Shown: positions 2,333-62,288 of the stretch, piece after piece
Position numbering within the stretch: the stretch's first letter is position 1
Layout: every line of letters begins with the position of its first letter
From: Piromyces finnis finn
Taxonomy: Eukaryota > Fungi > Neocallimastigomycota
Direction of reading: 5' to 3'
DNA length: 64,000 nt
Assembly: GCA_002104945.1 (NCBI GenBank)
Contig: MCFH01000067.1
Span: 62,001-126,000, forward strand
Notes under the pieces: generated by a model
Told to the model about the DNA's origin: nothing
The model's input: the letters and a program-made list of their open reading frames with translations, nothing else
Database searches by the model: none
Translations under genes and position numbers: made by a program

Positions 2333-4076
2333 ATTTTATTTAGCAGAAAAACCCATTCCAACTACTGACTGCTACACTTATCTTGGTGTTCCATTTGAAA
2401 AGAATTTGTCCCTTAAACCAGTTATTAAAACTCTTAATAACAAAGTTTTGAAAGGACTTTTTTCAGTCAGTAAATTCTTAAGAAATCCTAATATTCCTAT
2501 TCCTTTCACAAAGCTAGTACTTAACTCACAAGTGATTAGTAGAGTTTCATACTTTCATTACTTGGATCCAACAAAGCTAGGTCTAGGATTGTTCAGAATC
2601 ATGTTAACAAAGGAATACGATGGGTTGCCGGAGTTCATAAAGCTGCATCGTTTATATCTTTATACTCTATCTCATAAGATTTGAATATTCCTCCATTGTC
2701 AGCCAAATGTGCGTTAGCTCAGGTTAGATGTTTTAACAAATGGAAAAACTCAAATTGTATTATCTCACACCTTGTCAATTACATTCCTAAATTTAAAAAA
2801 TATACATGGTGCAAATCAAGTAAGACACTTGATAAAAAATTAAAGAAGCATAGAGATGTTAAAGTAGTTAAAAACTTTTATTGGAAAGATCCCAAAGGGA
2901 ATTCAATCAAAGCACAATATTATGATGATAATAAATTTATTGAAACTAAAGATTTTATCAAATTATGTTATGAGTACCCAGAGTTTGCCTATGGCTTCTA
3001 CTGGCTATTGAAAACAAGAAGCGGATACAAGTTGGATGCTAGAATTGCAAAAGCTGCTAAAATTATTGATCCAGTTTGTCCTAACTACTGTCTATGTTGC
3101 AAAAGTGGAGATCAAAGTATTAAGCATTGGTTATTAGACTGTCCAACATTTAGAGATATCCGTATTAAAAATTACAATTCCATAGTCCAGCTATTAAATT
3201 TTTTCAGTCAGCATAATTCTAACAGTCCTATCAATAATAATGAAAATGTTAATAACAGTAGAGACAGCAATAATATTAATAGTAATAGTAACAAAAGTAG
3301 TAATAATAGTAACAATAGTAATAGTAATAATAATAGTAACAATAGTAATAGTAATAATAGTAATAATAACAATAGTAGTAGTAGTGGTAGAAGTAATAAT
3401 ATTAGTAATGATAGTAATAGTGAAGATAATAATTCTAATTTAGATAATAATTTAGTTAATAATAGTAATAGTTCTAATAATCCGGTGAATATTAATGTGT
3501 ATGATTATTCTAATGTGTGCAGTATAATATTTAAATTCCTTCTTGGGGGAAGAAGTTTTAACAATATCAATTACAATTCAAGGGAATGGAAAGAACTTTG
3601 TAAGCGTCAGATTCAATCTGGTACTAATGAAGGAACACTATTCTTGACAGTAACCGCGGAACTTCTAACCAAAATCATGCCTTTTGCTATTGGCCAGCAA
3701 TGGTCAATGTTCAAAAGGTTTGAAGCAACATCCAAGAGCGTCAATGCTGAAGAAACAGTAAGACAGGCCAGGAGGGCCAGCGCAACCAATGGAGATTATA
3801 ATTTTGTCCCATGATAAAATTTTGATCTTTGGCTCGGTGTCCCATTGGAAGTCAAATACAATTATTATACTTTAGAATCAAAGTGGCTTTCTTACTTTAA
3901 TTAAAAATACTAGAATAGAATACATTATACCCAATTTTTATTCATTTGTGTTTATTTAAATATATTTTTTTTATTTTTATTTTTAATTTTTTTATAACAT
4001 GTATTATAATTTTAATTAAATTAATAATAAAGTTTAAAATATTTGATGCCGTTAAAAAAAAAAAAAAAAAAAAAAA
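2333..4076 (+). mobile_element. 5'-truncated, frameshifted copy of LINE family 1 (end of RT, zinc finger, N/S-rich tract, 3'UTR, poly-A)
   Basis: ORFs 2406-2684 and 2681-3814 match the C-terminus of the 1502-aa ORF at 19439-23947. It ends gatgccgtt plus A-run 4054-4076, like the full-length copy. Confidence 0.95.
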
Positions 4077-17623: not shown

Positions 17624-18193
17624 TTATATCAGAATTAATTAGGGAAAATAGAAATATCATATATAAAATTTCAACATTTGATATTTGTTCTTTTGAGCAT
17701 ACTTTTAAGTAACATTGATAAAATTAACATTATATTAAACTCATAATTATTTTAATAGTCAATTATTAGTATATATTATTTTTTAAAAAAAAAAAAAAAA
17801 ACTTAGCAAAGAAAACTTTCATTTTCACTTTCTTCGTGGGTATAATAAATTATAAATTTACATTGGGTTAATTCTATACTTAAATTATACCAAAAAAAAA
17901 AAGAAAAAAAAATAAATAAAATTTATTATAAATAAATATAAAATAAAAAAAAAAAAAAAGCTTTTTTGTAAACTATTTAATTAAATGATTTATTAATAGA
18001 TCTTTCATAATAAACTATTATATTTTAATCATAAAAATAAATTTGGATAAAATAAAAAAATATAAAATAAAATAATAAAAAAAATATAAATCTAATTATC
18101 ATAATCATTATTAGTATTATTATCATTATCAATTATAGCATACATCATGTTTACTATGTCATTTTAGATTGAGGTCATAATAAAATTTGAAAA

Positions 18194-18430
18194 TTACAGA
18201 GAATCCCTTTGAACTTCAACAGTAACCTTTATGGTGAGATTTCCATAATTTATGCATTTTCCTTTATCACATTTTCCATATTTACTTTGACAACCTTGTT
18301 TAACAGAGCAATAACTGCTAGTAGTTCCACAGTATCCCTTGGCACTGCAACATTGGCCTTCAGGACATTTACCTATATTTTTACCACATCTAATTTCACA
18401 ACTACCTTTTTTGGTAGTATTATCACACAT
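18194..18430 (-). pseudogene. Orphan CBM18 (hevein-like chitin-binding) exon, a paralog of the last exon of the LRR-CBM18 gene
   Basis: CGKNIGKCPEGQCCSAKGYCGTTSSYCSVKQGCQSKYGKC. The block about 17840-18575 parallels about 31090-31856, but the upstream LRR exons are absent. Confidence 0.8.
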
Positions 18431-18580
18431 TCTTTAAATATTAAAATAATTTATTATAGAATATATCATATTTATATATATATAAAATAAAATACAAAAT
18501 TAATAAAATATAATACTATTTTATTATATGAATAAATCCTTTTTATATTAACTTACATATAGCTTCCACTTTGTAAAATT

Positions 18581-18991
18581 ATTTATTATAATTTAAATAT
18601 TAAAATAAAAATGTTATCATTATATAATATTATATATTTTTTTAATTATTTCTCTGTTATTAAATAGTAAGAAATATTACTTTTGATATCATTTGTTTTA
18701 ATACTACAACTATTATTATATTTATTATTTATTTATTATTCTTATTATTTATTATTTATTAATTAAATATTATTTAAATATTCAATTTTTATCTTCTTTT
18801 TTTTTTTCATTTCTTTATTTCTTTAACCAATCAAATTTCAATATTAAATTTCTTTCATTAATTAAAAAACTTCTTTAAAAAAAAAAGAAATTCTTTAAAT
18901 ACAGAAAAAAGAAATTCTTACAAAATCTTTCGAATGAATAAAATTTTAATTTATTATTATTTAATATTATTAGTATAAAAATGTAGTTACC
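18581..18991. repeat. 411-bp direct duplication, apparently identical to 34491-34901
   Basis: Matches read through at a constant offset of 15910. Confidence 0.9.
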
Positions 18992-19438: not shown

Positions 19439-22400
19439 TCATGGAACAAAATTATGATCTCCATTGGTTGCGCTGGCCCTCCTGGCCTGTCTTACTGTTT
19501 CTTCAGCATTGACGCTCTTGGATGTTGCTTCAAACCTTTTGAACATTGACCATTGCTGGCCAATAGCAAAAGGCATGATTTTGGTTAGAAGTTCCGCGGT
19601 TACCGTCAAGAATGGTGCTCCTTCATTAGTACCAGATTGAATCTGACGCTTACAAAGTTCTTTCCATTCCCTTGAATTGTAATTAATATTGTTAAAACTT
19701 CTTCCCCCAAGAAGGAATTTAAATATTTTACTGCACACACTAGAATAATCATACACATTAATATTCACCGGATTATTAGAACTATTACTATCATTAACTA
19801 AATTACTATCTAAATTAGAATTATTATCTTCACTATTGCTATCATTACTAATATTATTATTTCTATTATTGTTATTATTACTATTGTTACTATTACTATT
19901 GTTACTATTACTATTGTTACTATTACTATTAATGTTATTACTATCTCTACTGATATTATCAATTTCATTATTATTGATAGGACTATTGGAATTACGTTGA
20001 CTGAAAAAATTTAATAGCTGGACTATAGAATCATAATGTTTAATACGGATATCTCTAAATGTTGGACAATCTAATAACCAATGTTTAATACTTTGATCTC
20101 CACACTTGCAACATGGACAGTAGTTAGGACAAACTGGATCAACAAATTTGGCAGCTTTGGCAACTCTAGCATCCAACTTGTATCCGCTTCTTGCTTTCAA
20201 TAGCCAGTAGAAGCCATAGGCAAACTCTGGGTACTCATAACATAATTTAATAAAATCTTTAGTTTCAATAAATTTATTATCATCATAATATTGCGCTTTG
20301 ATTGAATTCCCTTTGAGATCTTTCCAATAAAAGTTTTTAACTGCTTTAACATCTCCATGTTTCTTTAATTTTTTATCAAGTGTCCTACTTGATTTGCACC
20401 ACGTGTATTTTCTAAATTTAGGAATGTAATTGACAAGGTGTGAGATAATACAATTTGAGTTTTTCCATTTGTTAAAACATCTAACCTGAGCTAACGCACA
20501 TTTGGCTGACAATGGAGGAATATTCAAATCTTTTGAAATAGAGTATAAAGATATAAACGATACAGCTTTATGAACTCCGGCAACCCATCGTATTCCTTTG
20601 TTAACATGCTTCTGAGCAATCCTAGACCTAGCTTTGTTGGATCCAAGTAATGGTGCAAAGTATGAAACTCTGCTAATCACTTGTGAGTTAAGTACTAGTT
20701 TTTTGAAAGGAATAGGAATATTAGGATTTCTTAAGAATTTACTGACTGAGAAAAGCCCTTTCAAAACCTTGTTATTAAGAGCTTTAATTACTGGTTTAAG
20801 GGACAGATTCTTATCAAATGGAACACCAAGATAAGTATAACAATCAGTAGTTGGAATGGGTTGTCCTGCTAAGTAAAATGTTGGATCTCTCTTGTTCTGA
20901 TTTTCTATTGATTCAGGACGAATCACCATCGTTGAACATTTCTGGATACCAAATTCCATTTCATTATACAATGCCCATTCATTAACTCTTCTAAGCATCT
21001 TTTTTAAGCATCCTCTTGTTGGAGCACAAATAACTATATCATCTGCAAAAAGTCCACCACAGCATCGAGTGTCACCTAAACTGACTCCTAGATCTTCGCA
21101 CTCTCTAAATATATCATTAATAAAGAGATTAAAGAGAATAGGAGAAAGAAGGCAACCTTGACGGACTCCTTTCTTCACATCAAAAGATTTCGAGAATTGT
21201 CCATCTAATTTGACATTAGCCTTAGATGTTAAATATAAATTTTTGATAAATTGTAGACTCTTACCTCGGATTCCTAAACAATCTAATTTATGGAGAATAT
21301 TACCGATTGGGACTGAATCGTATGCTTTCCTGAGATCTAAAAAGGCCAAATATGTCTCTTTATTATCTAATTGACGTCTACGGCATATTTCTTGGATTGA
21401 AATGAAAAGACTAATACTTTCTTCCTTTTTTCGAAAACCAAATTGTTCAGGTCTAATGAAATTATTCTTTAAACCATATTCTGAGATTCTAGTGGTGACA
21501 ATTTTGGAAATCAACTTAATACCATTATTGATAAGTGATATACCTCGATAGTTATCACAATCTGTCAAATCTCCCTTCTTAGGAATAGAAACAATACTGG
21601 ATTCATTCCATGAGTTGGGGAAGTCTCCATCCCAAATACGGTTAAATAATTTAAGAATAAAATTTAAACCATGAGCGTCATTATCTGAAGTGGTATTACC
21701 AGAAGAATTATTATCTGTAGCATTATTAGAATCATTACTTGATGGAATTAATGCTTTGTAAAATTCAATTGGAATACCATCCGGACCTGATGCTTTATAA
21801 TTTGGAGTAGAGAGGATAGCTGACTTGACTTCATCAATACTAATATCTTGGTTGATATTCCACTCATCAAGCATAGGAAGTGAAAAACGTTTATTCGTTG
21901 GTTCTTCATACCAATGCTCTAAATCAAGACTTACACCACTTGGATCTGATGCAAGGTTTTCGAAATGATCATGCCACACATCTAGTTGTTCTTCCGTAGC
22001 AACAACTAATTCTCCATTTTTATTTTTAATTGGTTGAGCAATAAAGAAAGAATCTTTTCCAATTTTTGCAGTTTTCTTGATCCATTTCCAGGCCTTCTTA
22101 GGATTATGACTCTTCATATACTCACATCCTGTTTTAATCCAATGAAGATATTCTTTCTTCCTAAATTCATTACATCTTTTGTGGATGTAATCAATGAGTT
22201 TACGGTAGATTTTAATTCTTTTAATAAATTCATCTATATCATAAATTCTTTCTTTTTTAAATCTCTTATACAACTTCATTTTGATTTTTTGAAGATTAAA
22301 AATTTGTTGTGAAATATGAAATGAAGACTCTATAACATTATTTGCTGAAGTAATACTGAGCTCGTCTGCAATTGAAAAAGCAGTTGAAGTAAACTCTTTG

Positions 22401-30010: not shown

Positions 30011-31437
30011 AGTTACACCCTTAATTATAACAAAAGATATTTCATTTAAAAAATATTCTTAATTGAATTGAATATTTGTTGAAACTTATTTTAATAAAAC
30101 TTCCAGCAGGCTAATATTATTTTTTTTTAATTTTTTTGTTACAAATGAAAACACTAAATAATTTAATTGAGACCTTTTTAATTTTTTTATTGAAAAAACT
30201 GTGATACTATTTTTTTTTTCAATAGAAATAAGACCATTAATACTTCATGTTATTTGAATGATAGGATCAAAATGGAGGATTCTTTCCAAGTAACCCTATT
30301 TATTGGCTGCAATTTGTAATTTGACGCAAGATTTGCATAGTGCACTTCACAAGATTAAGTTGCTCTTGATGCGGAAAATAAATTCATACCATTATTGTTC
30401 ATAATGGTTGAAACATGAGAGGACAAATAACTTAGTTTGGTAAGTATTGTAAATCTTTTTCAAACTAGTCTATATTTTTTGTTTCTAAAATATTTGCCAA
30501 TAGAAATAATATTAGCTTTATTTAAATTGAAATTAAATTTATTTTTAATAGAATTTCATAAAGTTTAAGAATTTTGTTAGATGAAATATCCGTTAAAGTA
30601 ATTCTCCATATCACTACTACATACAATTTAATTTTTAAAATAAAAATTTAAATAATTTTGATTCATCAATTGCTTTTTTAATCATTTTTATATGCATGTT
30701 TTTTAAAATTTTTGAAAAAAGTTTCAATTTTATTTTCTTTTAAATTGTGATCTATCATGTTTTTAATGTGTATTTTCGCGTAATTTAGATTGAAAACAAA
30801 ATAGAAAAAGTAAAATTAAATAATTAAAAAGATTAGAATTAATATTGTACCAAAGATACATATATATAAAATAACTAAATATACATAAAATAATTAAGTT
30901 GAATTATAAAAAGAATACATAAAAAAATAAAAAGTTATTTCTATAGTTTTAAAAAAAATAACCTCAATAATTTCATTCACCATGAATTGTTTCTTTCAAA
31001 CAACTTTGAGTATTATTCTTTACTTGAATTTAAAAATTCTAACAATAAATTCAACAAAGAATTCCATACCTTAACTAATAACAAGCTTTTCTACTAATTT
31101 TATTTAATTATACCAGAAAAAAAAAAGAAAAAAGAATAAATAAAATTTATTATAAATAAATATAAAATAAAAAAAAAAAAAGCTTTTTTGTAAACTATTT
31201 AATTAAATGATTTATTAATAGATCTTTCATAATAAACTATTATATTTTAATCATAAAAATAAATTTGGATAGAATAAAAAATATAAAATAAAATAATAAA
31301 AAAAAATATAAATCAAATTATCATTATCATTATTAGTATTATTATCATTATCAATTATAGCATACATCATGTTTACTATGTCATTTTAGATTGAGGTAAT
31401 AATAAAATTTGAAAATTACAGAGAATCCCTTTGAACT

Positions 31438-33776
31438 TCAACAGTAACCTTTATGGTGAGATTTCCATAATTTATGGCATTTTCCTTTATCACATTTTCC
31501 ATATTTACTTTGACAACCTTGTTTAACAGAGCAATAACTGCTAGTAGTTCCACAGTATCCCTTAGCACTACAGCATTGACCTTCAGGACATTTACCTATA
31601 CCTTTACCACATCTAATTTCACAGCTATCTTTTTTGATAGTATTATCACACATTCTTTAAATATTAAAATAATTTATTATAGAATATATCATATTTATAT
31701 ATATATATATTGGTGTATTTGTATATTGATATATATTTATACATCAAAAATAAAATATAAATATAAAATTAGTTATGAAAATAAAATTTAATAAAAATAA
31801 ATACTATTAAATCTTTTTTTTTTTTTTTAACTTACATTTCATTTCCATTTTGTAATTTCATGTCCTTGATATCTTCACAATTAATGCAATTATCAGATAC
31901 GTTACTATTAAATAATATTATAATATAATATATATATAAATATGTAAATATATTTTTTAATTTTATATAAAAAATTATAATATTTTTTTTTTACTTTTGA
32001 TATTTACAAAGCATTTAATTTAGTCAATTTTCCAATTTCAGAAGGAATGGATCCAGTTAATTGATTTTCAGATAAATATCTATTTTGATTTATTAATTAA
32101 TTAATATTTGTTTTGAAATATTATTTTATATTTCAGTTTATATAAATATTTTAATTATTACAAATGTTCCAAGTTAATTAAATTTCCAATTTCAGAAGGA
32201 ATAGATCCAGTTAATTGACAGCCTGTTAAATACCTATTTAATTTATTCATGAATTAATAAATATTTTAATGAGTAAAAAAAAAAGAAAACTTAATTTTAT
32301 TAATAAAATTATATATATTTCAATATTTACAAAAATCTTAAATTAATTAAATTTCCAATAACTGAAGGAATGGATCCTTTCAATTGACTACTACTTAAAA
32401 ATCTATTTAGTTCATTTATTTATCAACGAAATAGTTAATGAGTAAAATTTTTTTTATTATTTTAATTATAAATATTTTTTATTTTTTGTTAATAGTTACA
32501 AAGTATGTAAATTAGTTAATTTTCCAATTTCGGAAGGAATAGATTCCACTTGAATGCCAATTAACCATCTGTTTGATTATTTTATCAATTAGTAAAATTA
32601 ATTTTATTTTTAATATACATTTTTATTACTTACAATTCTTTTAATTCAACTAAATTGCCTATTTCTTTAGGTATTTTTCCTGTTATATTATTCCAAGACA
32701 AATCTCTATTTTAATTTATTTATTTATCCATAAATTATTTAATAAGTAAAGATTATTTTGATTTTTAAAAAATAAATATACTTAATATTATTAATATTTA
32801 CATATAATTTAACTTTGTTAAATTTCCAATTTCTTTAGGAATTTTACCAGTCAAATTATTCCCAGTTAACCATCTATTTTAATTTATTTATTCAGTATAA
32901 TAAAATAATTAATAAGTAAAAATTATTTACTTTGATTATGTATAATATAATATAAATATTTTTAATTTGTCGAGTGTTACATTTTTTCTAAATTAGTTAA
33001 TTTTCCAATACTTGAAGGAATTTCGCCAGTTAGTTGATTAACACCTAAATGTCTATTTAATTCATTTATTCATTAATAAAATGGTTAATGAGGTAAATAT
33101 AAACTTTTATTCTTAATTATAAAAGGTATGTATATGGTTTTTAATATTTACACATTTTTTAAATTAGATAATTTTCCAATTTCTGATGGAATGGGTCCAG
33201 TTAATTGATTTTCATATAACCATCTATTTTCAATTTATTCATTCATCAATATAATATTTGATTAGTAAAAATAACTTCAATTATATTTATAAATATTAAA
33301 CATTATAAATATTTTCTTATATTTACAATTTTTCTAATTTAGTTAATTTTCCAATGGTTGAAGGAATGGATCCAGTCAATTGAATTTCAGATAAATTTCT
33401 ATTTTATTTCATTTTATTTCATTTTATTTCATTTTATTCATTAATAAATAGATAATGAGTAAAAAAATAATTTTTATATTATTATAATAATATTGTTGTA
33501 GTATATCATACTATATATTATTAATAAATATTATTACATTTCAGTTATTCGGCCATCATCATTACATGTAATACCAAAACTGTCATCTTTTCCAAAATGA
33601 ACATTACAACAACTATCACCTTCAAATGGTATATTAGTTTGTTCTAATAAGCTTTTAATAGCTTTACAATCACCTTTTGATGCTTTCTTACCATTTTTCG
33701 ATAATTTATCAATGGAATAAGAAAGTGAAGTGCTAGACACAGCCAAAATAATACCTAAGAATTTAGACAGCTTCAT
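31438..33776 (-). CDS. Secreted LRR-CBM18 protein (389 aa): signal/Cys-cap exon 33776-33538; LRR exons 33398-33327, 33223-33152, 33052-32981, 32873-32802, 32705-32634, 32568-32500, 32402-32331, 32233-32162, 32079-32008; cap exon 31904-31836; CBM18 exon 31654-31438
   Basis: Every internal exon is AG/GT bounded, 72 nt (two are 69), phase 2, and encodes LxxNqLtGsIPseIGkLtnLxxL. The total is 1170 nt, in frame, with no stops. Confidence 0.88.
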
Positions 33777-34490
33777 TATAAATAATAATTTGCGTTTTTC
33801 TTAAATGTTTCTTGATAAAAAATCTTTTCTTTTTTTAATGAACAAAAGTTAAAACTTTGGAACAGATAAAAAAGAAAGAAAGAAAAAAAAATGTTAAATT
33901 TAAAATGAAATTTGTTTATATTTTTATTTTTTATAAATCACTTTTCCCTTTTTTATATATACAAAAGAAATATTTATAATTATTCTTTTTCTTTCATTTT
34001 TACGAAACTATTCATTAAAGTATTATGCTTATATGTTCAATTCATTTATCTTTTCTTATTTATATCTTTACTTTTGTATTCTAATTCTAACTACGATTTA
34101 TTCTACTTTTTTTTTTTTTATTTTTACATTCACTAATAAATACATTGAATAATTGAATAATAATGTAAGGTGTCTTTTTAATATTTCATAATTGAATATA
34201 AAAATGTAGAGACCTACCTTTTATTAATAAATAAGTCCGTTGATTTTTACCTTTTACCTTTTGCCTTTTTTTTTTTTTTGACAGAGAAGAAAGAAAGAAA
34301 AAAAAATTCGCAAGCATTGAAAATTTATAGATGGAAAATTCATTTAATAATTAATATAATTTAATAAATTACAATCCTATATTAATATATATCAATTATT
34401 AATCTTTAATTTATTTTAAATATATAAATTTATATTGTTAAAAGATAAATTTTGATAAATTAAAAAAGAAATATTTTGAAATATACCTAT

Positions 34491-34901
34491 ATTTATTATA
34501 ATTTAAATATTAAAATAAAAATGTTATCATTATATAATATTATATATTTTTTTAATTATTTCTCTGTTATTAAATAGTAAGAAATATTACTTTTGATATC
34601 ATTTGTTTTAATACTACAACTATTATTATATTTATTATTTATTTATTATTCTTATTATTTATTATTTATTAATTAAATATTATTTAAATATTCAATTTTT
34701 ATCTTCTTTTTTTTTTTCATTTCTTTATTTCTTTAACCAATCAAATTTCAATATTAAATTTCTTTCATTAATTAAAAAACTTCTTTAAAAAAAAAAGAAA
34801 TTCTTTAAATACAGAAAAAAGAAATTCTTACAAAATCTTTCGAATGAATAAAATTTTAATTTATTATTATTTAATATTATTAGTATAAAAATGTAGTTAC
34901 C
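34491..34901. repeat. Second copy of the 411-bp duplication (18581-18991)
   Basis: Direct sequence match. Confidence 0.9.
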
Positions 34902-53610: not shown

Positions 53611-56349
53611 TTTAAATGAATAATAATTTAATAATATTTAAATAATTGAAATTATATTTAGGAAAGATTAATATTTGTATTACGTAGGACGACAGAGTAT
53701 TTATCTATCTATTTATTTATTTTTATTCTAATAATTTATTTATTATTATATTTATTTATTTATTTAGTTTTCAAAATTCAAAATTATTTTGTTCAATTGT
53801 TATTTGTTTTCAATTTATTATTATATTCATCCATCCATATTAATTTTTAAAACATTCAATTGAAAAACTAATTAAATCAATATTTTATTATTAAATAAAG
53901 TTTATTAATATTACATTTTTAATATTGATATCTTAATTTTTAATCTAAATTAAATTTATTTCATCTATTTTTATATTAAATATTAAATTAAATTTATCGA
54001 TAGAATGGCAATTTTTATATTGATTTTATGACTTAGCCATATAAATGAATTTTTAAATGTAACACAATTGTGTGATACATTATAATCAAATAATTTAATA
54101 AAATATCAATATATTATATTACATTCTAATATAGGTTCATTGTATATTTTAAAACAAAAAATTTCCCAAATTAAATTTTTATCTTCTTTTTTTCTAAAAA
54201 ATTTTTTTTAATTGAAATTGACCCCTTTTTTTTTTTGAATTTATAATTTTTAAATAGAAGGAAAGAAAAAACTAGTAAGTTTGATCGCAACCTTTTTTTA
54301 ATAAAGAATTTTTTATTATTTTTTTTAATAAAGAAATAAAGAGAAAAAAAAGATGATAAATACAAGAATTAATTATAGAAAGCATACAGTACATGAATAG
54401 AATGACGACTATTAATGCTATTGAAGAGTAAATAAGTGATGAATATGACGGGTGATGATGTATTGTTTTTTATTGTTATACAAGTAATGCTAATTTTTTT
54501 TTAATATATTATTTTTATTACATTAATTTCATTTAAATACATTTTAATACATTTTGTATTATGAATATTGTATTGAAAAATAATAAAAACTAACACAATA
54601 CAATTATTATTATTATTGAAAATAATAATTATCTTAGTTATATAATAGCTAATAATATTAAAGTTAAAATTATTAATCTTAAAAAAGAAAAGGCCTTTGT
54701 TATTCTATTTTGAATGAAATGAAACGACGAAACACCAGAATCAAAAACAATTCAATGTTTAAATTTATAAATATGTATATATTTTTAAGGATTATTTATT
54801 CATGATTTATAATTATAATGGTACTTTTAATATAAATTATAATTATTATAATTATGTAATAACGATACCATTAAATTCACTTCAATCATGGATACCAATT
54901 TGAATAATCATTATTTATAGATTATTATTAATTATTTCAACTATATCATAAATAAAGAATATTACTATATTACTTATATTCTAAAAGTTTTTATTAAAAG
55001 GTTAAAATTTATAGATTATAAAAATGTAAATAGTTGAAATCATAATAAAATAAAAATAAAAATAAACATTGTTTATTATAAAAATTAATAATAAATAATG
55101 TATATATGATATAATCATGTATTGAAAATGTAGGAAATAACTAATAATTAAAGTCTAATTTTAATAAAAATTTATTTATTTAGAAATAAGAATATTATTA
55201 ACTTCACAGGACGACACATTTCTATAATATTATGTATATTATAAGTGAGAAACGATATGTGCAATTATAATAAGAGAAATGCTAATTTTTAAATAGTATA
55301 AATAGTAGAAAATAGCTCATTTAAAAAGGGAGTGATTAATAGTTCATAAAATAGCAAATAATAAAAGATCATTAAAACCTTTATAAATATAATTTTTATA
55401 ACAAAATCCTATCAAATATTATTATTTCAAATTAATAAAATAATTTAATATAACACTATAGAAAATAAAAAAAAAAAAAAAATAAATATTATTGTATAAA
55501 GTTTTTTTTTTTTTTTTAACTTTTATATAAATTAAAATTTATTTATTTTTAATATGAAAAATTGAAATATAAATAATTTAAACCATTTGATTATATTACT
55601 TTTTTTATATTTCTTTATACATTACTTTTTTTTATTTTTTTTTACCTTTAATTAGAATAGAAAAAAATAAGAAATAATATTTTTTTTAACTTTACTTTAT
55701 TTTCTAATATTTTTCTATTTCTTTATTCTAGTTTTCTTATAATTATAGTAATTTAAACTTTAATTACTTTTTGTATTATTGAAAACTCACTTATATAATT
55801 TTGATTAGCATGGATATTAGACCAATGATATGTTTAACATTTTTATTTAAACACATCTACCCTTTAGATTCTATGAATGAAATTTGCTATAGAGTTACTA
55901 TTATTAGTAGTAATATTAATTAAGATTGAGCCAAAATCTTTATTATTATTATTGAAAGGAATGAGAGATTTATAAACTAAATCCGTATATTAAGTATTTT
56001 TTCACCATTTTCTATAGGATAGTTTATATAAAACAGATAGATATTTATATTATTTAAAGAAGAAGGATTGTTCTTTAAATTATTTTTTCAATTTTTTATT
56101 TTTTCGGAAAACGAATAATAATATGATAATAACAATTTCAGATATGCTCATTGCTATTGATAACTTATTTAATCTATTAAAAACCTGTCTAGTAGTATTA
56201 TTATAATTATCAGAAAAACTATAATCCAAGATCTATTCTATTAAGTATATTTATATTCGAAATTATAAAGTTTAATTAGTGATACATTTAATAATTGCAT
56301 TAATTGCGATAATATAAATGACAAGAATTTACAAAATGGAAAATAAATA

Positions 56350-56408
56350 AAAATATTAGCGAAAATGGACTTAGTGGTTTAATCCCAAAAGAGATTACGG
56401 AACTAATA

Positions 56409-56460
<52 letters not shown>

Positions 56461-56476
56461 GTAATAGTAATAATTA

Positions 56477-56517
<41 letters not shown>

Positions 56518-56533
56518 GTAATAGTAATAATTA

Positions 56534-56571
<38 letters not shown>

Positions 56572-56587
56572 GTAATAGTAATAATTA

Positions 56588-56627
<40 letters not shown>

Positions 56628-57245
56628 TAGAGTAATAATAATAATAACAATAATAATAATAATAATAATAATTTAAATTTATATATATAATACTTTGTTT
56701 TTTTTCTCTACCTATAATAGAATATAATGATTTTTATTTTAAATTTTTTTTTAAATATATATTTTTATACAATATAACTGGTATGATAATTATAATACCA
56801 AACCAATTTTAATCAAGGATATAAATCTAAAAAAGGATGATTCCACATATCAGAATAAGGACTATTCTGAAAACCAGAATGATGATGATTCAGATAATAA
56901 ACCATTATTAACTACAGTAATTATACCATGAATAAGTATTATTGCTGTATTTGTTATATTCCTAGTTTCTAAAATAAATAAAAAAAATGGTTTAAAGAAC
57001 AACAATGATTCTGTCACTGTAAATATAGAGAATTAAATTTCTACACGTGATTCTTCAAGTAATACAAAAAGAACATCATCTAATATAATAATTTATACTG
57101 CACTTCTTGCTTCAGTTAATAATGCAATAGAGAATAATTGTATTCATTCAAAATTTGTTACTTCAATTAATAATAGAAATATTAGTTCTCAAAATAATGA
57201 ATCAGTAAATAATAATAACAATGGTAAGAGATTATCAAATTATTA
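56350..57245 (+). pseudogene. Degenerate LRR receptor-like paralog (last LRR exon plus TM/tail exon with stops)
   Basis: ISENGLSGLIPKEITEL runs into an AAT tract. 56780-57245 parallels the terminal exon at 61781-62288 but contains stops. Confidence 0.7.
56409..56671. repeat. (AAT)n microsatellite with periodic agtaatagtaataattaga interruptions
   Basis: Seen directly. Confidence 0.95.
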
Positions 57246-57572: not shown

Positions 57573-58580
57573 AAATCTAGGTAATAATATTTTAAATGGA
57601 ACTATTCCATCAGAATTTGGAAAACTATCAAACTTACAAACATTGTAAATTGTTTTATATAATTTATTTAAAAATTCATATTTTTATATATAATATTAAT
57701 AAAAAACATATCTTTTTTAAAATAATGCATAACCTCTTTCTTCATTAATATAATATATAAAAGAAAACTCAAAAACAATACTTTAACTGGTCTAATTCCA
57801 TCTGATCTTGGAAAATTACCAAACTTAAAAGAATTGTAATCTTTTTTATATTTATCATAAAGATAGTAAAAATTGTAATACTTAATAATTTGAATTTATA
57901 TTTTATTTAATAATTTAAACTAACAGAGATATAAGTGAAAATGGGTTTAGTGGTTCTATACCAGACGAAATTAAGATGAATGATAATATAGATTTGTAAA
58001 TATCTTAAACTTTTCTTTTTTATTTATATGATTTTATAGTTTTACAATTATCATTGAATAAAGAAGTTTTATATTAAAAAAGTTTTATATATTTAATAAA
58101 ATTTATTTATATTGTAGTACATACAAAAATTATAATGATATTAATAAAGTTAAACCAGTAGTGAATGATACAAATTCAAACGAGGCTAATTTAAATTATA
58201 AACCATCATCATTTAATAAAATAATAGTAATTGAAATGATAATGATAATTACTATTATAATAGCCATATTTTTAGTCTTAACTTTACAGAAAAAGAAAAG
58301 AAGTAATGATAAAAATTTAACAAATTCATATTATTCACGAATTATCAATGATTCATCAGGACGTAACATAATAGTTAATACAAATGATAATAATGATGAC
58401 AATGACTCAATTATTATAAATACGATAACCAATGTTAGAACTAATTTTAATAGTTTATTGAATGATTCCGATAGTAATCCTAATATTACACTTGTTGCAA
58501 CGGACCAACCTCCAAAATATGAAGATATAATAGAAGAAAATATAGAAATAAATCAAAGTAGTATAAATGCAAATAGATGA
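57573..58580 (+). pseudogene. 5'-truncated LRR receptor-like paralog: exons 57573-57644 (72), 57764-57835 (72), 57927-57995 (69), 58118-58580 (TM plus PPKY tail)
   Basis: AG/GT-bounded phase-2 exons join in frame. TM IIVIEMIMIITIIIAIFLVLTL, PPKY at 58509-58520. No signal-peptide exon was found upstream of the AAT run. Confidence 0.75.
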
Positions 58581-59736
58581 ATTTTCGATAATTTAAAGGT
58601 GGAAATGGATGATGTATTGGAAGAAGTTGGGTTATATCAATTCCATATAAAATAAAAACCTCTTTTTAGAATTTATTTTAACTATCCATTATTGAATAAA
58701 GTAAAAATATATTAAATAAAGTTTATTTAAAATATAAATAAATGAAGCAATTAAAATTTAAATTTTAATAAATTAATAATTAAGTAAATTCGTGTAACAA
58801 GAGTTCCATTTTTAGTGTAAATCCTTAAATTAAAATCCAATAAAATTTCATATAAAACATCACAAATGAAAGTTACACAATATTCTAATATTATTAATGA
58901 TATTAATAAATTAATAAAGTTTTATAATTTTATATTAATTATTCTTTTTTTTTTTTTTTAAACAAAAAATGTAAAAATTAAAATGAATTCTATTCTCTAA
59001 TTATGTCAATAATGACTTTAATAATAATGATAGTAAAATAAGTTAATAAACTATACCTCTCTAACTAGTTTACATTGGCAATTTAATGAATGAAAATGAT
59101 ATTTCTATAGGTATATTCTCAGCATTCAATATTAATTTACATTACATTACATTTAAGCGAAATTATAGGAAAAAATTCATCTATAGTTCATCTATTAATA
59201 GTATTGTTTTATGTTTTATATTGTCATGGCATGGATCATTGAGGTAGTTAGGAGTATCTTTGTGAAGTTGGCTCAGTCAGCAGCGCGTAAGTCTCGTAAT
59301 TAAAATGTAAATAGAAATAAAAAAAATCTTTTATATAAAAATAAAATCATTACTTTTTACTCCCCTCCATAAAAAAATAATTATCCTTTACAATTAATTA
59401 TCCGTTTTTAATTCATAAATTATTATTTCTATTATTATTTTTAATTTCAAATGTAGCTTTTTAAATCAAAAAATTCGTGTAACATTTAATTTGTGTAACA
59501 ATAATGATTTTCTAATTAGCCAATAAAATTAAAGCAATATTTTATGAATTACATTTCTATTATTGTTTTTCCAAATTAATATTAAATAAGATTTGATTAT
59601 CATTATTATTATAGTTGACTTTTTTTTACCTTTTTTTTTTTGCCGTTTTTAAAAATAATAGTTCTTTTATTTTAATTTAATAATGCAAAATGTGAATGAA
59701 AAAAAAAAAAAAAAAAAAAGATAGATATAGGAAAAA

Positions 59737-62288
59737 ATGGTTAAATACGCTTTATTATTGTTAAGTTTAACCTCTACAATAAAAGTAATCTATTCAGCAT
59801 TTATTGAAGATTGCATTCCAATAAATAAATTATTAGGAGAACCTTCTGATTATGATTGTTGTTCCCATAAAGGAATTAATTGTATCAATAGTTTTATAAC
59901 AGAAATGTAATAAAAAGTTTTTTTTTTCAATCAGTGAAAAAAGAAAAAAAATATTAACATATTAACATAGATTAAAACAAACTTATTTAACAATTTTTTA
60001 TTATAAATAGAAAATTAGAAAATGAATATTTAAAATGTCCTATTCCTTCAGAAATTGGTAGTTTAAAAAACTTGGAAAAACTGTAATTTTTATTTCAATC
60101 TTCTTAATAAAGAACCTAAAATATATATTATATTTTTTAATTGATATTTACTTATTATTATTATTATTATTATAAATAGAGTTTTATCTCATAACTATTT
60201 ATATGATAATATTCCTTCAGAACTTGGGAATTTATCAAATTTAAAAATATTGTAATTGGTTATTTTTATTTTTATTATTATTATTTTTAAGTAATAATAA
60301 TTAAAAAATATATAAATTAATTTTTTTTTAATTGATAATTTTTATATTATAAAATAGAAATTTAAACTGTAATGATTTAATAGGTACTATCCCTTCTGAA
60401 CTTGGAAATTTAAAAAATTTGGAAGAAATGTAATTATTATTTTTTTTTCTTTATCTATATAAATAGTAGTAATATTGAATAATATAACAATAAATATTAA
60501 TATATAGTCATTATAAATAGCGATTTATCGATTAATCAATTAAGAAGTTCAATTCCTCGTGAAATTGGAAATTTACCAAACTTGAAAAAATTGTAAATAT
60601 TTTTTTTTCTTTTATAATAAGTAAAAAAAAAAAAAATAGATTTATAGAATTATTATTTTTTTTAATATTAATATATTTTATATTTTACATAGGATATTAT
60701 ATTCAAATGATATAATAAATATGATTCCTTCAGAACTTGGTAAATTAGAAAAATTGAATATGCTGTAACTATTTTTCTTTTCTTTTCTTTATAATAAATA
60801 GTAAATTTTCATATATAATAATTTATAATTTTTATTTCATATTATTATGTATTATAAATAGAGTAATCAATAATAATGCATTAAGTGGTTCTATTCCTCC
60901 AGAACTTGGCAATTTAAAAAACTTATATTATTTGTAAATAATATTTTTCAATATTATAAATTTTAATATTCTATTTATTATTACAATTTTATTTATTTTT
61001 TTTTTTTTTATTATTTTCTAATATAAATAGAAGTCTTAATAATAATATGTTATATGATGCTATTCCTCCTGAGCTTAGTAATTTGGAAAACCTGGAATAT
61101 ATGTAATTGCTGGTTTTTTTCTTATATGCATTAAAAGAAATTTATTAATTTTTATTTCAACCTCATATTTTTTAAAATTTTATTTATTCATGATTAATAT
61201 AATAAAATTCATTTAAAAAATAAAAGGTATTTCGGAAATAATACTTTAAATGGTTCTATTCCCCCTTCTTTTGGAAATTTATCAAAATTAAAAATTCTGT
61301 AATATAATTTATTTAATAATTATTATAAAAATAAAAAGTTATTATATTTATAAATAGGAATTAAAAGTTAACAATTACCCATTTTCTTATATAAATGTTA
61401 TTTTTAATAATCCTTATTAAAAAAAAAATAATAAAGAAATCTCCAAAATAATACTTTAAGTGGTCCTATTCCACCAGAACTTGGAAGATTATCAAACTTG
61501 AAGGAATTGTAAATTTATATTTTATAAAAATTATTAATTAAATAACAATAATAAAAATCTCATATAATTTTTTTTTTTTTTATAAATTTATAAAAAAAAA
61601 TAGAGATATTAGCGAAAATGGATTTAGTGGTTCTATTCCAGATGAAATATTTGAATTACAAACGTGTAAAATGTAAATACTATTTCTTTTAATTGTATTG
61701 TATTATAAATAATTCATAAATATATATTATTTTAATTAATTACATTTTTGTATAATAAAAAAATAAAAAATATAATATAGATATAGAAAAAATTTTAATA
61801 CCAAACCAATTTCAATCAAGGATATTCCTCAAAATAAGGATGTTTCAGATAATAAAAATAAAAATAATAAATCAATAATAACTACGGTAACCATGTCAGG
61901 AATGAGTATTGTTGCTTTATCAGCTTTATTTCTGGTTATAAAGAAAAATAAAAAAAATAATATAAAAAAAAAGAATAATTCTACAAACAATGTGAATAAT
62001 ATATATAATATAAATGATTGTTTTCCTTCCTCTACTGATTCTTCAAACGATATCAAAAGAATATCTAATCATTCTAATACTGTTTATAATGCTCATCTTG
62101 CACCAGTTGATGATACAATTAATAATAATAGAAATCATTCAAAATCTGTTAATTCAATTAATAATAGAAACAATAATTCACAAAATAATGAAACAAGAAA
62201 TAACAATATTTTCAATTATAACATTTCTATCAATGAAGAAGACTTACTTCCAAGTTATAAAGAAGTAGTAAATGAAAAAAATACATAA
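59737..62288 (+). CDS. LRR receptor-like membrane protein (464 aa): exon 59737-59906 (signal/Cys-cap); 72-nt LRR exons starting 60011, 60180, 60358, 60521, 60693, 60862, 61031, 61227, 61437; 69-nt exon 61604-61672; final exon 61781-62288 (TM, Asn-rich tail, LPSY)
   Basis: All introns are GT-AG and phase 2. The total is 1395 nt, in frame. Repeats read LxxNxLsGsIPxELGxLxxLxxL. Confidence 0.9.

What the first reader, a model, noticed from the sequence alone, without database searches (positions are those of the whole stretch)
31438..33776. Same microexon LRR cassette fused to a chitin-binding CBM18 instead of a TM anchor
Seen: signal peptide, Cys-cap, nine LRR exons, a 69-nt cap exon and a hevein-type CBM18, all with phase-2 junctions identical in position to the TM-type gene. 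Inference: a common LRR exon toolkit is attached to alternative C-terminal modules, one membrane-anchored and one tethered to the fungus's own chitin wall or to foreign chitin. This suggests a modular pattern-recognition or adhesion system.
Basis: partly seen in the sequence, partly recalled or inferred. Interest (0 to 1): 0.75.

Follow-up and report, generated by a model that had tools for sequence, protein, structure and literature searches.

The report
Secreted LRR protein with chitin anchor
The anaerobic gut fungus Piromyces finnis has an intact 12-exon gene for a secreted protein that joins nine plant-type leucine-rich repeats, one per tiny exon, to a chitin-binding (hevein/CBM18) module. 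It is one more member of an unstudied family seen at several other places in this genome, and what the repeats bind is unknown.

Summary
On the minus strand, 33776-31438 reads as 12 exons, with 11 GT-AG introns that are all phase 2, giving a 1170-nt CDS of 389 aa. The parts are a signal peptide with a Cys-rich N-cap, nine single-repeat LRR exons (eight of 72 nt, one of 69 nt), a 69-nt Cys cap exon, and a last exon with a CBM18 above Pfam's cut-off.

At least six more loci in this genome pair 72-nt phase-2 LRR exons with 1-5 CBM18 modules. One is the NCBI protein 'L domain-like protein [Piromyces finnis]'. LRR+CBM18 proteins also exist in Neocallimastix.

The TM-type gene at 59737-62288 shares only the design. 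Its repeats show no positional correspondence with ours (44.6% against 44.0% identity), and the two 69-nt exons are unrelated.

The stop codon sits inside a decayed second CBM18.

The most likely function is a chitin-tethered display of an LRR binding surface. This is untested.

The scan found this family before on other DNA of this genome.

The parts
33538..33776 (-). Exon 1: start codon, signal-peptide-like N-terminus, and a Cys-rich N-cap (C37, C56, C57, C71) that ends in the first half-repeat
   Evidence: It is 54-62% identical to the first exons of three CBM18-ending paralogs and 36% identical to the first exon of the TM-type gene.
32008..33398 (-). Nine single-repeat LRR exons with their introns: 33398-33327, 33223-33152, 33052-32981, 32873-32802, 32705-32634, 32568-32500 (69 nt), 32402-32331, 32233-32162, 32079-32008
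   Evidence: The consensus is xLxxNQLTGxIPSEIGNLxNLxx. A profile of the repeats hits the plant receptors MIK2, GSO1 and FLS2 at E 1e-57 to 1e-48.
31836..31904 (-). Exon 11, 69 nt, phase 2 to 2: a C-terminal Cys cap (N-V-S-D-N-C-I-N-C...)
   Evidence: It has homologous exons in paralogs L022/P0001, L023 and L024, and at window 56269-56343. It is 74% identical to P0001 residues 285-307.
31438..31654 (-). Exon 12: a linker with 2 Cys, one intact CBM18 (about 31611-31492), a vestigial tail and the TGA stop
   Evidence: Pfam PF00187 at 31.1 bits against a cut-off of 27.8. PDB lectin-C at E 2.8e-10, and hevein at 1e-5.
31417..31482 (-). Vestige of a second CBM18. The stop codon (31440-31438) aligns with the second Cys of the 'CC' pair of the second CBM18 of paralog P0001. 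One further Cys is already lost.
   Evidence: The alignment with P0001 runs through the stop codon.
17869..18991 (-). Truncated duplicate, not part of the gene. It holds the last intron end, the CBM18 exon and the 3' flank (96% identical to 31095-31707, with a 1-nt deletion). These are joined to a 412-nt copy (100% identical) of the gene's far upstream region 34490-34901. It lies beside a LINE reverse-transcriptase fragment.
59737..62288 (+). Comparator: the TM-type LRR gene, with 12 exons (170 nt, 9 x 72, 69 and 508 nt), all phase 2

Best explanation
This is a real, probably expressed gene of Piromyces finnis. It encodes a 389-residue secreted, non-catalytic protein.

Shown:
- The 12-exon reading frame is intact.
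- The N-terminus looks like a signal peptide, and there is no TM segment or GPI-like tail.
- The LRR domain has nine plant-type repeats with disulfide-type caps.
- One intact hevein-type CBM18 sits at the C-terminus.
- The gene belongs to a multi-locus LRR-CBM18 family.

Inferred:
- After secretion, the CBM18 binds chitin, most plausibly that of the fungus's own wall.
- This holds the LRR solenoid at the cell surface, where its variable concave face (the x positions of LxLxxN, rich in W/Y/F/H) binds an unknown protein or glycan ligand.
- With no signalling domain of its own, the protein would act as an adhesin, a decoy or inhibitor, or a ligand-presenting partner of the membrane-anchored LRR proteins.
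- The repeat array grew by tandem duplication of an exon-plus-intron unit. That explains the uniform 72-nt phase-2 exons.
For: Gene model: 11 GT-AG phase-2 introns, an open frame of 389 codons, and exon GC of 28% against 10% in introns. Seven of the 11 introns have a TACTNAY branch-site-like motif 26-63 nt from the acceptor.

CBM18: above Pfam's cut-off, all 8 Cys present, and the Ser and two of the three aromatic ligand residues of hevein kept.

No TM segment: the highest 19-residue hydropathy outside the N-terminus is 1.13. There are five N-glycosylation sequons.

Same junction in relatives: the NCBI paralog P0001 (408 aa) has the same cap-exon to CBM18 junction. An intron-free JGI record, P0167 (354 aa, GC3 15%), has the same order of signal peptide, N-cap, 7 LRR, Cys cap and CBM18.

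Fold: the AlphaFold model of P0167 (pLDDT 83, LRR part above 90) matches plant LRR ectodomains and PGIP.

Family: at least 6 further LRR-to-CBM18 loci in this genome, and members in Neocallimastix.

Expression, indirect: 4 runs from 3 studies hold 0.32-0.36 of the sampled 31-mers of 31300-33900. The CDS exons alone give 0.315. Without the CBM18 exon they give at most 0.24.
Against:
- The 389-aa product is not in the protein collection, although a paralog is. The gene may therefore be unannotated or modelled differently.
- There are signs of erosion: a stop inside a second CBM18, a degenerate sixth repeat, and a truncated duplicate beside a LINE.
- The first aromatic residue of the hevein binding site is Lys here.
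- Chitin binding, localisation and the LRR ligand are all untested.
Confidence: 0.7

Rival explanations
1. The gene is a recently inactivated or silent copy in a decaying, repeat-rich region, and the intact frame is only a remnant.
For: The stop codon lies inside a vestigial second CBM18, and another Cys of that module is lost. The sixth repeat lacks the Asn and one residue. A truncated duplicate lies beside a LINE at 17.9-19.0 kb. Decayed LRR/TM fragments lie at 56.3-58.6 kb. The product is absent from the protein collection.
Against: Twelve exons stay in frame and all 22 splice sites are canonical. Loss of one of two CBM18 modules leaves a functional architecture, since paralogs carry 1 to 5 modules. 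Four runs hold a share of words that fits the complete set of exons.
Confidence: 0.12
2. The CBM18 exon is not joined to the LRR exons. It belongs to a separate small gene, or the LRR gene ends at exon 11.
For: The exon begins almost at an ATG. A solo copy of it exists at 18.2 kb and was called as a 78-aa protein. The junction was not seen in reads.
Against: The exon has no signal peptide of its own. Exon 11 ends in phase 2 without a stop, and exon 12 needs phase 2. The homologous junction is present in the annotated paralog P0001 and in the intron-free record P0167. Every relative of exon 1 in the genome has a CBM18 exon 1.5-6 kb downstream on the same strand.
Confidence: 0.05
3. The CBM18 does not anchor the protein to the fungus's own wall. 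Instead it binds GlcNAc-containing polymers of other organisms (other fungi, or cell envelopes of partner or competing microbes), so the protein bridges cells or marks foreign surfaces.
For: Hevein domains bind GlcNAc oligomers in general (established knowledge). CBM18 genes were the most strongly up-regulated CAZyme-class genes of Caecomyces churrovis in co-culture with a methanogen, and the authors suggest a role in fungus-methanogen association (PMC8665504). In Pecoramyces sp. F1, an 'LRR receptor-like' gene and a 'chitin binding protein' gene are among the ten most down-regulated in co-culture (PMC6414434).
Against: The nearest abundant chitin is the fungus's own wall. None of the regulated genes in those papers is shown to be an LRR-CBM18 protein. 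Nothing was tested here.
Confidence: 0.2
4. It is a wall-tethered inhibitor. Like plant PGIP, the LRR face binds and blocks a lytic enzyme (chitinase, protease, glucanase) of competitors or predators, at the polymer it protects.
For: It is a secreted, kinase-less protein of about ten 24-residue plant-type repeats, the size of PGIP. PGIP is among the sequence and fold matches (1ogq: E 1e-7; TM-score by target 0.49). CBM18-only fungal proteins are reported to shield chitin from chitinases (bioRxiv 10.1101/462499, abstract listed).
Against: The resemblance is of fold and size only. The best matches are receptor ectodomains, not PGIP. No target enzyme is known.
Confidence: 0.15

Closest known systems
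Paralog P0001, 'L domain-like protein [Piromyces finnis]' (NCBI/UniRef, 408 aa, contig C196:208-211k), and the other LRR-CBM18 loci of this genome
   Same: Homologous first exon (54% identity), 72-nt phase-2 LRR exons, homologous Cys cap exon (74%), and the same junction into a CBM18 exon (69%).
   Different: P0001 has two N-cap/LRR blocks (4+1 repeats plus a terminal LRR) and two intact CBM18 modules. Ours has one block of nine repeats and one CBM18 plus a vestige. Other loci have 1-16 repeats and 1-5 CBM18 modules. Ours is not in the protein collection.
Plant LRR receptor ectodomains (MIK2, GSO1, FLS2, ERL1, BRI1) and receptor-like proteins
   Same: 24-residue 'plant-specific' repeat with the LxxLxLxxNxLTGxIPxxIGxL consensus, and Cys-pair caps. 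These are the best sequence-profile and fold matches.
   Different: No transmembrane helix and no kinase. The C-terminus is a lectin module. The N-cap is not recognised by Pfam LRRNT_2. The N-cap motif recurs in chytrid proteins (Phlyctochytrium bullatum, Chytriomyces sp. MP71), which fits inheritance within zoosporic fungi better than a recent transfer from plants.
Plant polygalacturonase-inhibiting protein (PGIP, 1OGQ)
   Same: A secreted, wall-located, kinase-less protein of about ten 24-residue LRRs.
   Different: PGIP has no carbohydrate-binding module, and its target is known. Here the target is unknown and the wall contact would be made by CBM18.
Hevein-type lectins and CBM18 proteins (hevein, pokeweed lectins C/D, wheat germ agglutinin; fungal CBM18 chitin-shielding effectors; the large CBM18 repertoires of chytrids and gut fungi)
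   Same: The 8-Cys hevein module passes Pfam's cut-off, and the Ser and two aromatic ligand positions are kept. CBM18 is the most abundant CBM family in gut-fungal genomes (PMC8665504). This genome has at least 155 matches.
   Different: Those proteins are CBM18-only or carry catalytic domains (chitinase, deacetylase, CotH). Here the partner is an LRR solenoid. The first aromatic position (Trp21 of hevein) is Lys.
Plant chitin receptors (LysM-RLK CERK1, CEBiP)
   Same: An extracellular protein that combines a chitin-binding module with a surface location.
   Different: In those, the lectin module (LysM, not hevein) is itself the sensor and is coupled to a kinase. Here the lectin is more likely the anchor and the LRR the sensor, and there is no signalling domain.

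Membership tests
CBM18 / hevein (Pfam PF00187 Chitin_bind_1) | Profile match above the curated cut-off | tested here: met
   31.1 bits against a cut-off of 27.8, profile positions 2-38 of 38. PDB lectin-C at E 2.8e-10, hevein at 1e-5.
CBM18 / hevein (Pfam PF00187 Chitin_bind_1) | Eight Cys in the hevein spacing (four disulfides) | tested here: met
   C333, C340, C345, C346, C352, C359, C365 and C372 of the model. They align with the Cys of the pokeweed lectins.
CBM18 / hevein (Pfam PF00187 Chitin_bind_1) | Ligand residues of hevein (Ser19, Trp21, Trp23, Tyr30; residue numbering from my own knowledge) | tested here: inconclusive
   Ser, Tyr (for Trp23) and Tyr are kept, but Trp21 is Lys (alignment). 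This is compatible with binding but not proof of it.
CBM18 / hevein (Pfam PF00187 Chitin_bind_1) | Binds chitin or chito-oligosaccharides | not testable with these tools
   Needs a pull-down or ITC with recombinant protein.
Plant-specific-type extracellular LRR domain | Tandem 24-residue repeats with LxxLxLxxNxLxGxIPxxLxxL | tested here: met
   Nine repeats. I, P, I, G and three L are invariant, and one repeat has 23 residues. The profile's best hits are plant LRR receptors.
Plant-specific-type extracellular LRR domain | Cys-containing N- and C-terminal caps | tested here: met
   N-cap with C..CC..C in exon 1, conserved in 5 genes. C-cap with C-x2-C in exon 11 plus 2 Cys at the start of exon 12. 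Pfam LRRNT_2 was not matched.
Plant-specific-type extracellular LRR domain | Curved solenoid fold | tested here: inconclusive
   Only a family proxy (P0167) could be folded by reference. It gave pLDDT above 90 in the LRR part, and the top 50 PDB matches are all plant LRR proteins. Our own spliced product was not folded.
LRR receptor kinase / receptor-like protein | Transmembrane helix, with a kinase for RLKs | tested here: not met
   No hydrophobic segment outside the N-terminus. The frame ends 17 residues after the last Cys of the CBM18.
Gut-fungal LRR-CBM18 family ('L domain-like protein') | Signal peptide and N-cap exon homologous to the family's, LRR exons, and a C-terminal CBM18 on one strand | tested here: met
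   Exon 1 has four relatives in the genome, each with a CBM18 exon downstream. P0001 is annotated with LRR and PF00187.
Gut-fungal LRR-CBM18 family ('L domain-like protein') | Transcript that joins the LRR and CBM18 exons | tested here: inconclusive
Intron-free records exist for the relatives P0167 and P0156.

The most novel reading that the evidence does not exclude
The wall-tethered (CBM18) and membrane-anchored (TM) microexon LRR proteins of gut fungi together form a surface recognition system for non-self or partner organisms, analogous to plant RLP/RLK or PGIP layers. The symmetric phase-2 one-repeat exons let repeat number and C-terminal anchor be reshuffled quickly. That would be an extracellular LRR immune or partner-sensing repertoire in a kingdom reported to lack LRR pattern-recognition receptors (PMC2939053).
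Probability: 0.12. Interest if true: 0.85.

Novelty: new variant of a known kind. Interest (0 to 1): 0.45.

Why it matters
Fungi were reported to lack extracellular LRR pattern-recognition receptors (Soanes and Talbot 2010, PMC2939053). Later work notes only a few LRR kinases in chytrids and zygomycetes (PMC13618815).

This genome has more than a thousand candidate plant-type LRR microexons. A recurrent sub-family of these genes replaces the membrane anchor with chitin-binding modules.

CBM18 genes are the largest CBM family of gut fungi and the most strongly induced by methanogen co-culture, and their function is unknown (PMC8665504). An LRR partner gives some of them a testable role: displaying a binding surface on the wall.

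No paper in the searched library links LRR and CBM18 in anaerobic fungi.

For this locus alone the gain is modest. It is one apparently unannotated member that documents loss of a CBM18 module and a truncated duplicate.

Tried and rejected
Later queries used at most 31912 or at least 31961.

It was only translated locally to check the frame and hydropathy. All searches were exon by exon, by reference. A junction-spanning DNA pattern has no reference and was left out.

3. Looking for the product in the protein collections.
- The profile of first exons found the paralog P0001, chytrid LRR proteins and many exon-1-only ORFs of about 70 aa, but not our protein.
- Word searches with P0001, whole and C-terminal part, did not find it either.
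- The CBM18 exon alone found only the window's own 18-kb copy.
- Look-ups in the window's own genome are withheld.

4. An exact 30-nt piece of exon 12 was searched in JGI metagenome contigs and gave no match.

5. 'Same cassette as the TM gene' is rejected. There is no diagonal signal and the 69-nt exons are unrelated.

6. Recent transfer of the LRR module from plants is not supported. The N-cap motif occurs 5-9 times per protein in Phlyctochytrium bullatum and in Chytriomyces. Many bacterial LRR proteins score as high as or higher than plant ones against P0001. No tree was built.

7. P0168, which also has 389 aa, is not our protein. It is made of CBM18 repeats only.

Full report
**What is there.** The window is about 20% G+C. 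It is G000:C197:62001-126000 of a 56.46-Mb assembly in 232 contigs. A paralog found later is the NCBI protein 'L domain-like protein [Piromyces finnis]' on a 269,528-nt contig, the length of C196. The organism is therefore the anaerobic gut fungus Piromyces finnis.

Read on the minus strand, 33776-31438 resolves into 12 exons:
- Exon 1, 33776-33538 (239 nt).
- Nine LRR exons. Eight are 72 nt, and the sixth, 32568-32500, is 69 nt.
- Exon 11, 31904-31836 (69 nt).
- Exon 12, 31654-31438 (217 nt, TGA stop).

All 11 introns are GT..AG, 65-181 nt long, and all in phase 2. Exon GC is 28% and intron GC is 10%. Seven introns carry a TACTNAY branch-site-like motif 26-63 nt before the acceptor. The frame is open for 389 codons.

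**The protein, piece by piece.** Searches were made exon by exon, by reference. The joined model was only translated locally, and was not searched or folded.
- Exon 1 gives a short hydrophobic N-terminus typical of a signal peptide, then a cap with four Cys.
- Each LRR exon gives 23 residues plus a split Leu codon. The consensus is xLxxNQLTGxIPSEIGNLxNLxx. A profile of 30 such exons from this gene and its paralogs hits the plant receptors MIK2, GSO1, FLS2, RGFR and BRI1-like at E 1e-57 to 1e-37. It also hits Leptospira LIC proteins and PGIP.
- Exon 11 is a Cys cap (…D-N-C-I-N-C…).
- Exon 12 matches Pfam Chitin_bind_1 above the curated cut-off (31.1 against 27.8 bits). It also matches pokeweed lectin-C, lectin-D and hevein. 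All eight Cys are present, as are the Ser and two of the three aromatic ligand positions.
- There is no hydrophobic segment after the signal peptide and no GPI-like tail. There are five N-glycosylation sequons.

**A decayed second module.** Aligned with paralog P0001, homology continues through the stop codon. The TGA lies on the second Cys of the 'CC' pair of a second CBM18, and another Cys of that module is already replaced. The gene has gone from two CBM18 modules to one.

**Comparison with the TM-type gene.** The gene at 59737-62288 (+) also has 12 exons (170 nt, 9 x 72, 69 and 508 nt), all phase 2, and ends in a TM segment.

The arrays, however, are not copies of one cassette:
- Repeat i of one gene is no closer to repeat i of the other (44.6%) than to any other repeat (44.0%).
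- Repeats within our gene are 54% alike.
- Exon-plus-intron units of about 170 bp match each other at 70-77% within the gene, introns included.
- The two 69-nt exons are unrelated (9% identity). The TM gene's is a terminal LRR and ours is a Cys cap.
- The first exons are 36% identical.

**The family.** Exon 1 has four relatives in the genome, and each has a CBM18 exon downstream on the same strand:
- C177:242-245k has 16 LRR exons, a 69-nt terminal LRR and one CBM18.
- C196:208-211k is P0001. It has two N-cap/LRR blocks, a terminal LRR, a Cys cap and two CBM18 modules.
- C196:9.6-11.6k has one LRR exon, a Cys cap and three CBM18 modules.
- C196:191-198k is degenerate.

Further loci with 72-nt phase-2 LRR exons followed by CBM18 are C210:180-183k (at least 9 LRR, 5 CBM18) and C192:255-258k (at least 8 LRR, about 4 CBM18). 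C146, which encodes P0169 (647 aa, irregular LRRs, 2 CBM18), is another LRR-CBM18 locus.

The genome holds at least 1137 candidate LRR microexons and at least 155 CBM18 matches.

Outside this genome:
- P0167 (354 aa) is an intron-free JGI record with GC3 of 15%. It has the same order of parts, and its CBM18 is 73% identical to ours.
- The cluster of P0156 contains LRR+CBM18 proteins of Neocallimastix lanati and N. californiae.
- A metagenome contig of 15% G+C (L029) shows a homologous first exon followed by LRR microexons.
- The N-cap motif also recurs in the chytrids Phlyctochytrium bullatum and Chytriomyces sp. MP71. This argues for an origin within zoosporic fungi.

An AlphaFold model of P0167 has mean pLDDT 83, above 90 in the LRR part. 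It matches only plant LRR proteins among the top 50 PDB chains: MIK2, ERL1, BRI1, FLS2, PGIP and an LRR ice-binding protein.

**Expression.** Nothing from those places was sent to a search tool afterwards.

What remains is indirect. Four runs from three studies, all of the same organism and only guessed to be RNA, hold 0.32-0.36 of the sampled 31-mers of 31300-33900. Words lying wholly inside the CDS exons make up 0.315 of all words, and about 0.24 without exon 12. So the figures fit a fully spliced mRNA with short UTRs.

The 389-aa product is not in the protein collections, although paralog P0001 is. A 30-nt piece of exon 12 has no match in JGI metagenome contigs.

**Reading.** The gene is real and most likely expressed. 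It encodes a secreted LRR protein whose only other domain is a chitin lectin.

The simplest mechanism is tethering to chitin, most likely the fungus's own wall, with the LRR concave face exposed. The ligand is unknown. The rivals are adhesion to other organisms' GlcNAc polymers, a PGIP-like inhibitor, a silent decaying copy, and a separate CBM18 gene. All are listed with their tests.

Papers show that CBM18 genes respond strongly to methanogen co-culture in C. churrovis (PMC8665504). In Pecoramyces sp. F1, an LRR receptor-like gene and a chitin-binding gene are among the most regulated (PMC6414434). None of these genes is shown to be an LRR-CBM18 fusion. No paper in the searched library describes such fusions in anaerobic fungi.

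**Earlier notes of this scan.** The scan noted the same family on other DNA of this genome and the TM-type neighbour. I re-derived the paralog structures and the organism independently. The statements in those notes about expression were not re-tested.

Noticed in passing
window 17869-18991 (-): A truncated duplicate of the gene's 3' end. It holds about 20 nt of exon 11, a shortened last intron, the CBM18 exon (96% identical, with a 1-nt deletion that shifts the tail) and the 3' flank. These are joined to a 412-nt stretch that is 100% identical to 34490-34901, far upstream of the gene, as if 31.7-34.5 kb had been deleted from a copy. It abuts a LINE reverse-transcriptase fragment. The unequal identities (96% against 100%) are unexplained.
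   Followed up: partly
window 19442-21499 (-) and 2678-3811 (+): Long ORFs of a non-LTR (LINE-type) reverse transcriptase with an Asn/Ser-rich low-complexity insert. There are at least two copies in the window.
   Followed up: no
window 56269-57243 (+): A decayed gene remnant. It has a Cys cap exon of the CBM18-gene type (…N-N-C-I-N-C…), run directly into part of a terminal-LRR exon, then an (AAT)n tract and a TM-type last exon with an in-frame stop. It shows the cap exon next to a TM module.
   Followed up: partly
window 57573-58650 (+): A partial TM-type copy: two 72-nt LRR exons, a 69-nt terminal LRR and a TM exon, preceded by a long (AAT)n tract instead of a first exon.
   Followed up: no
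L032:414-3022 and L033 (JGI samples 3300010976 and 3300010980): A relative with a homologous first exon and one intron, followed by a single 779-codon exon. That exon holds two N-cap/LRR blocks without introns, a Thr-rich stalk and a hydrophobic C-terminus (GPI-like). It is either an intron-poor relative or a transcript with one retained intron.
   Followed up: partly
P0002-P0005: Chytrid proteins (Phlyctochytrium bullatum, 1422-2258 aa) repeat the N-cap motif 5-9 times. They look like chains of capped LRR blocks, as in P0001, which has two.
   Followed up: no
window 32000-33420 (-): Exon-plus-intron units of about 170 bp match each other at 70-77%, introns included. A conserved intron motif (TTTACTCATTAA…AAATAG) contains the branch-site-like TACTCAT.
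   Followed up: partly
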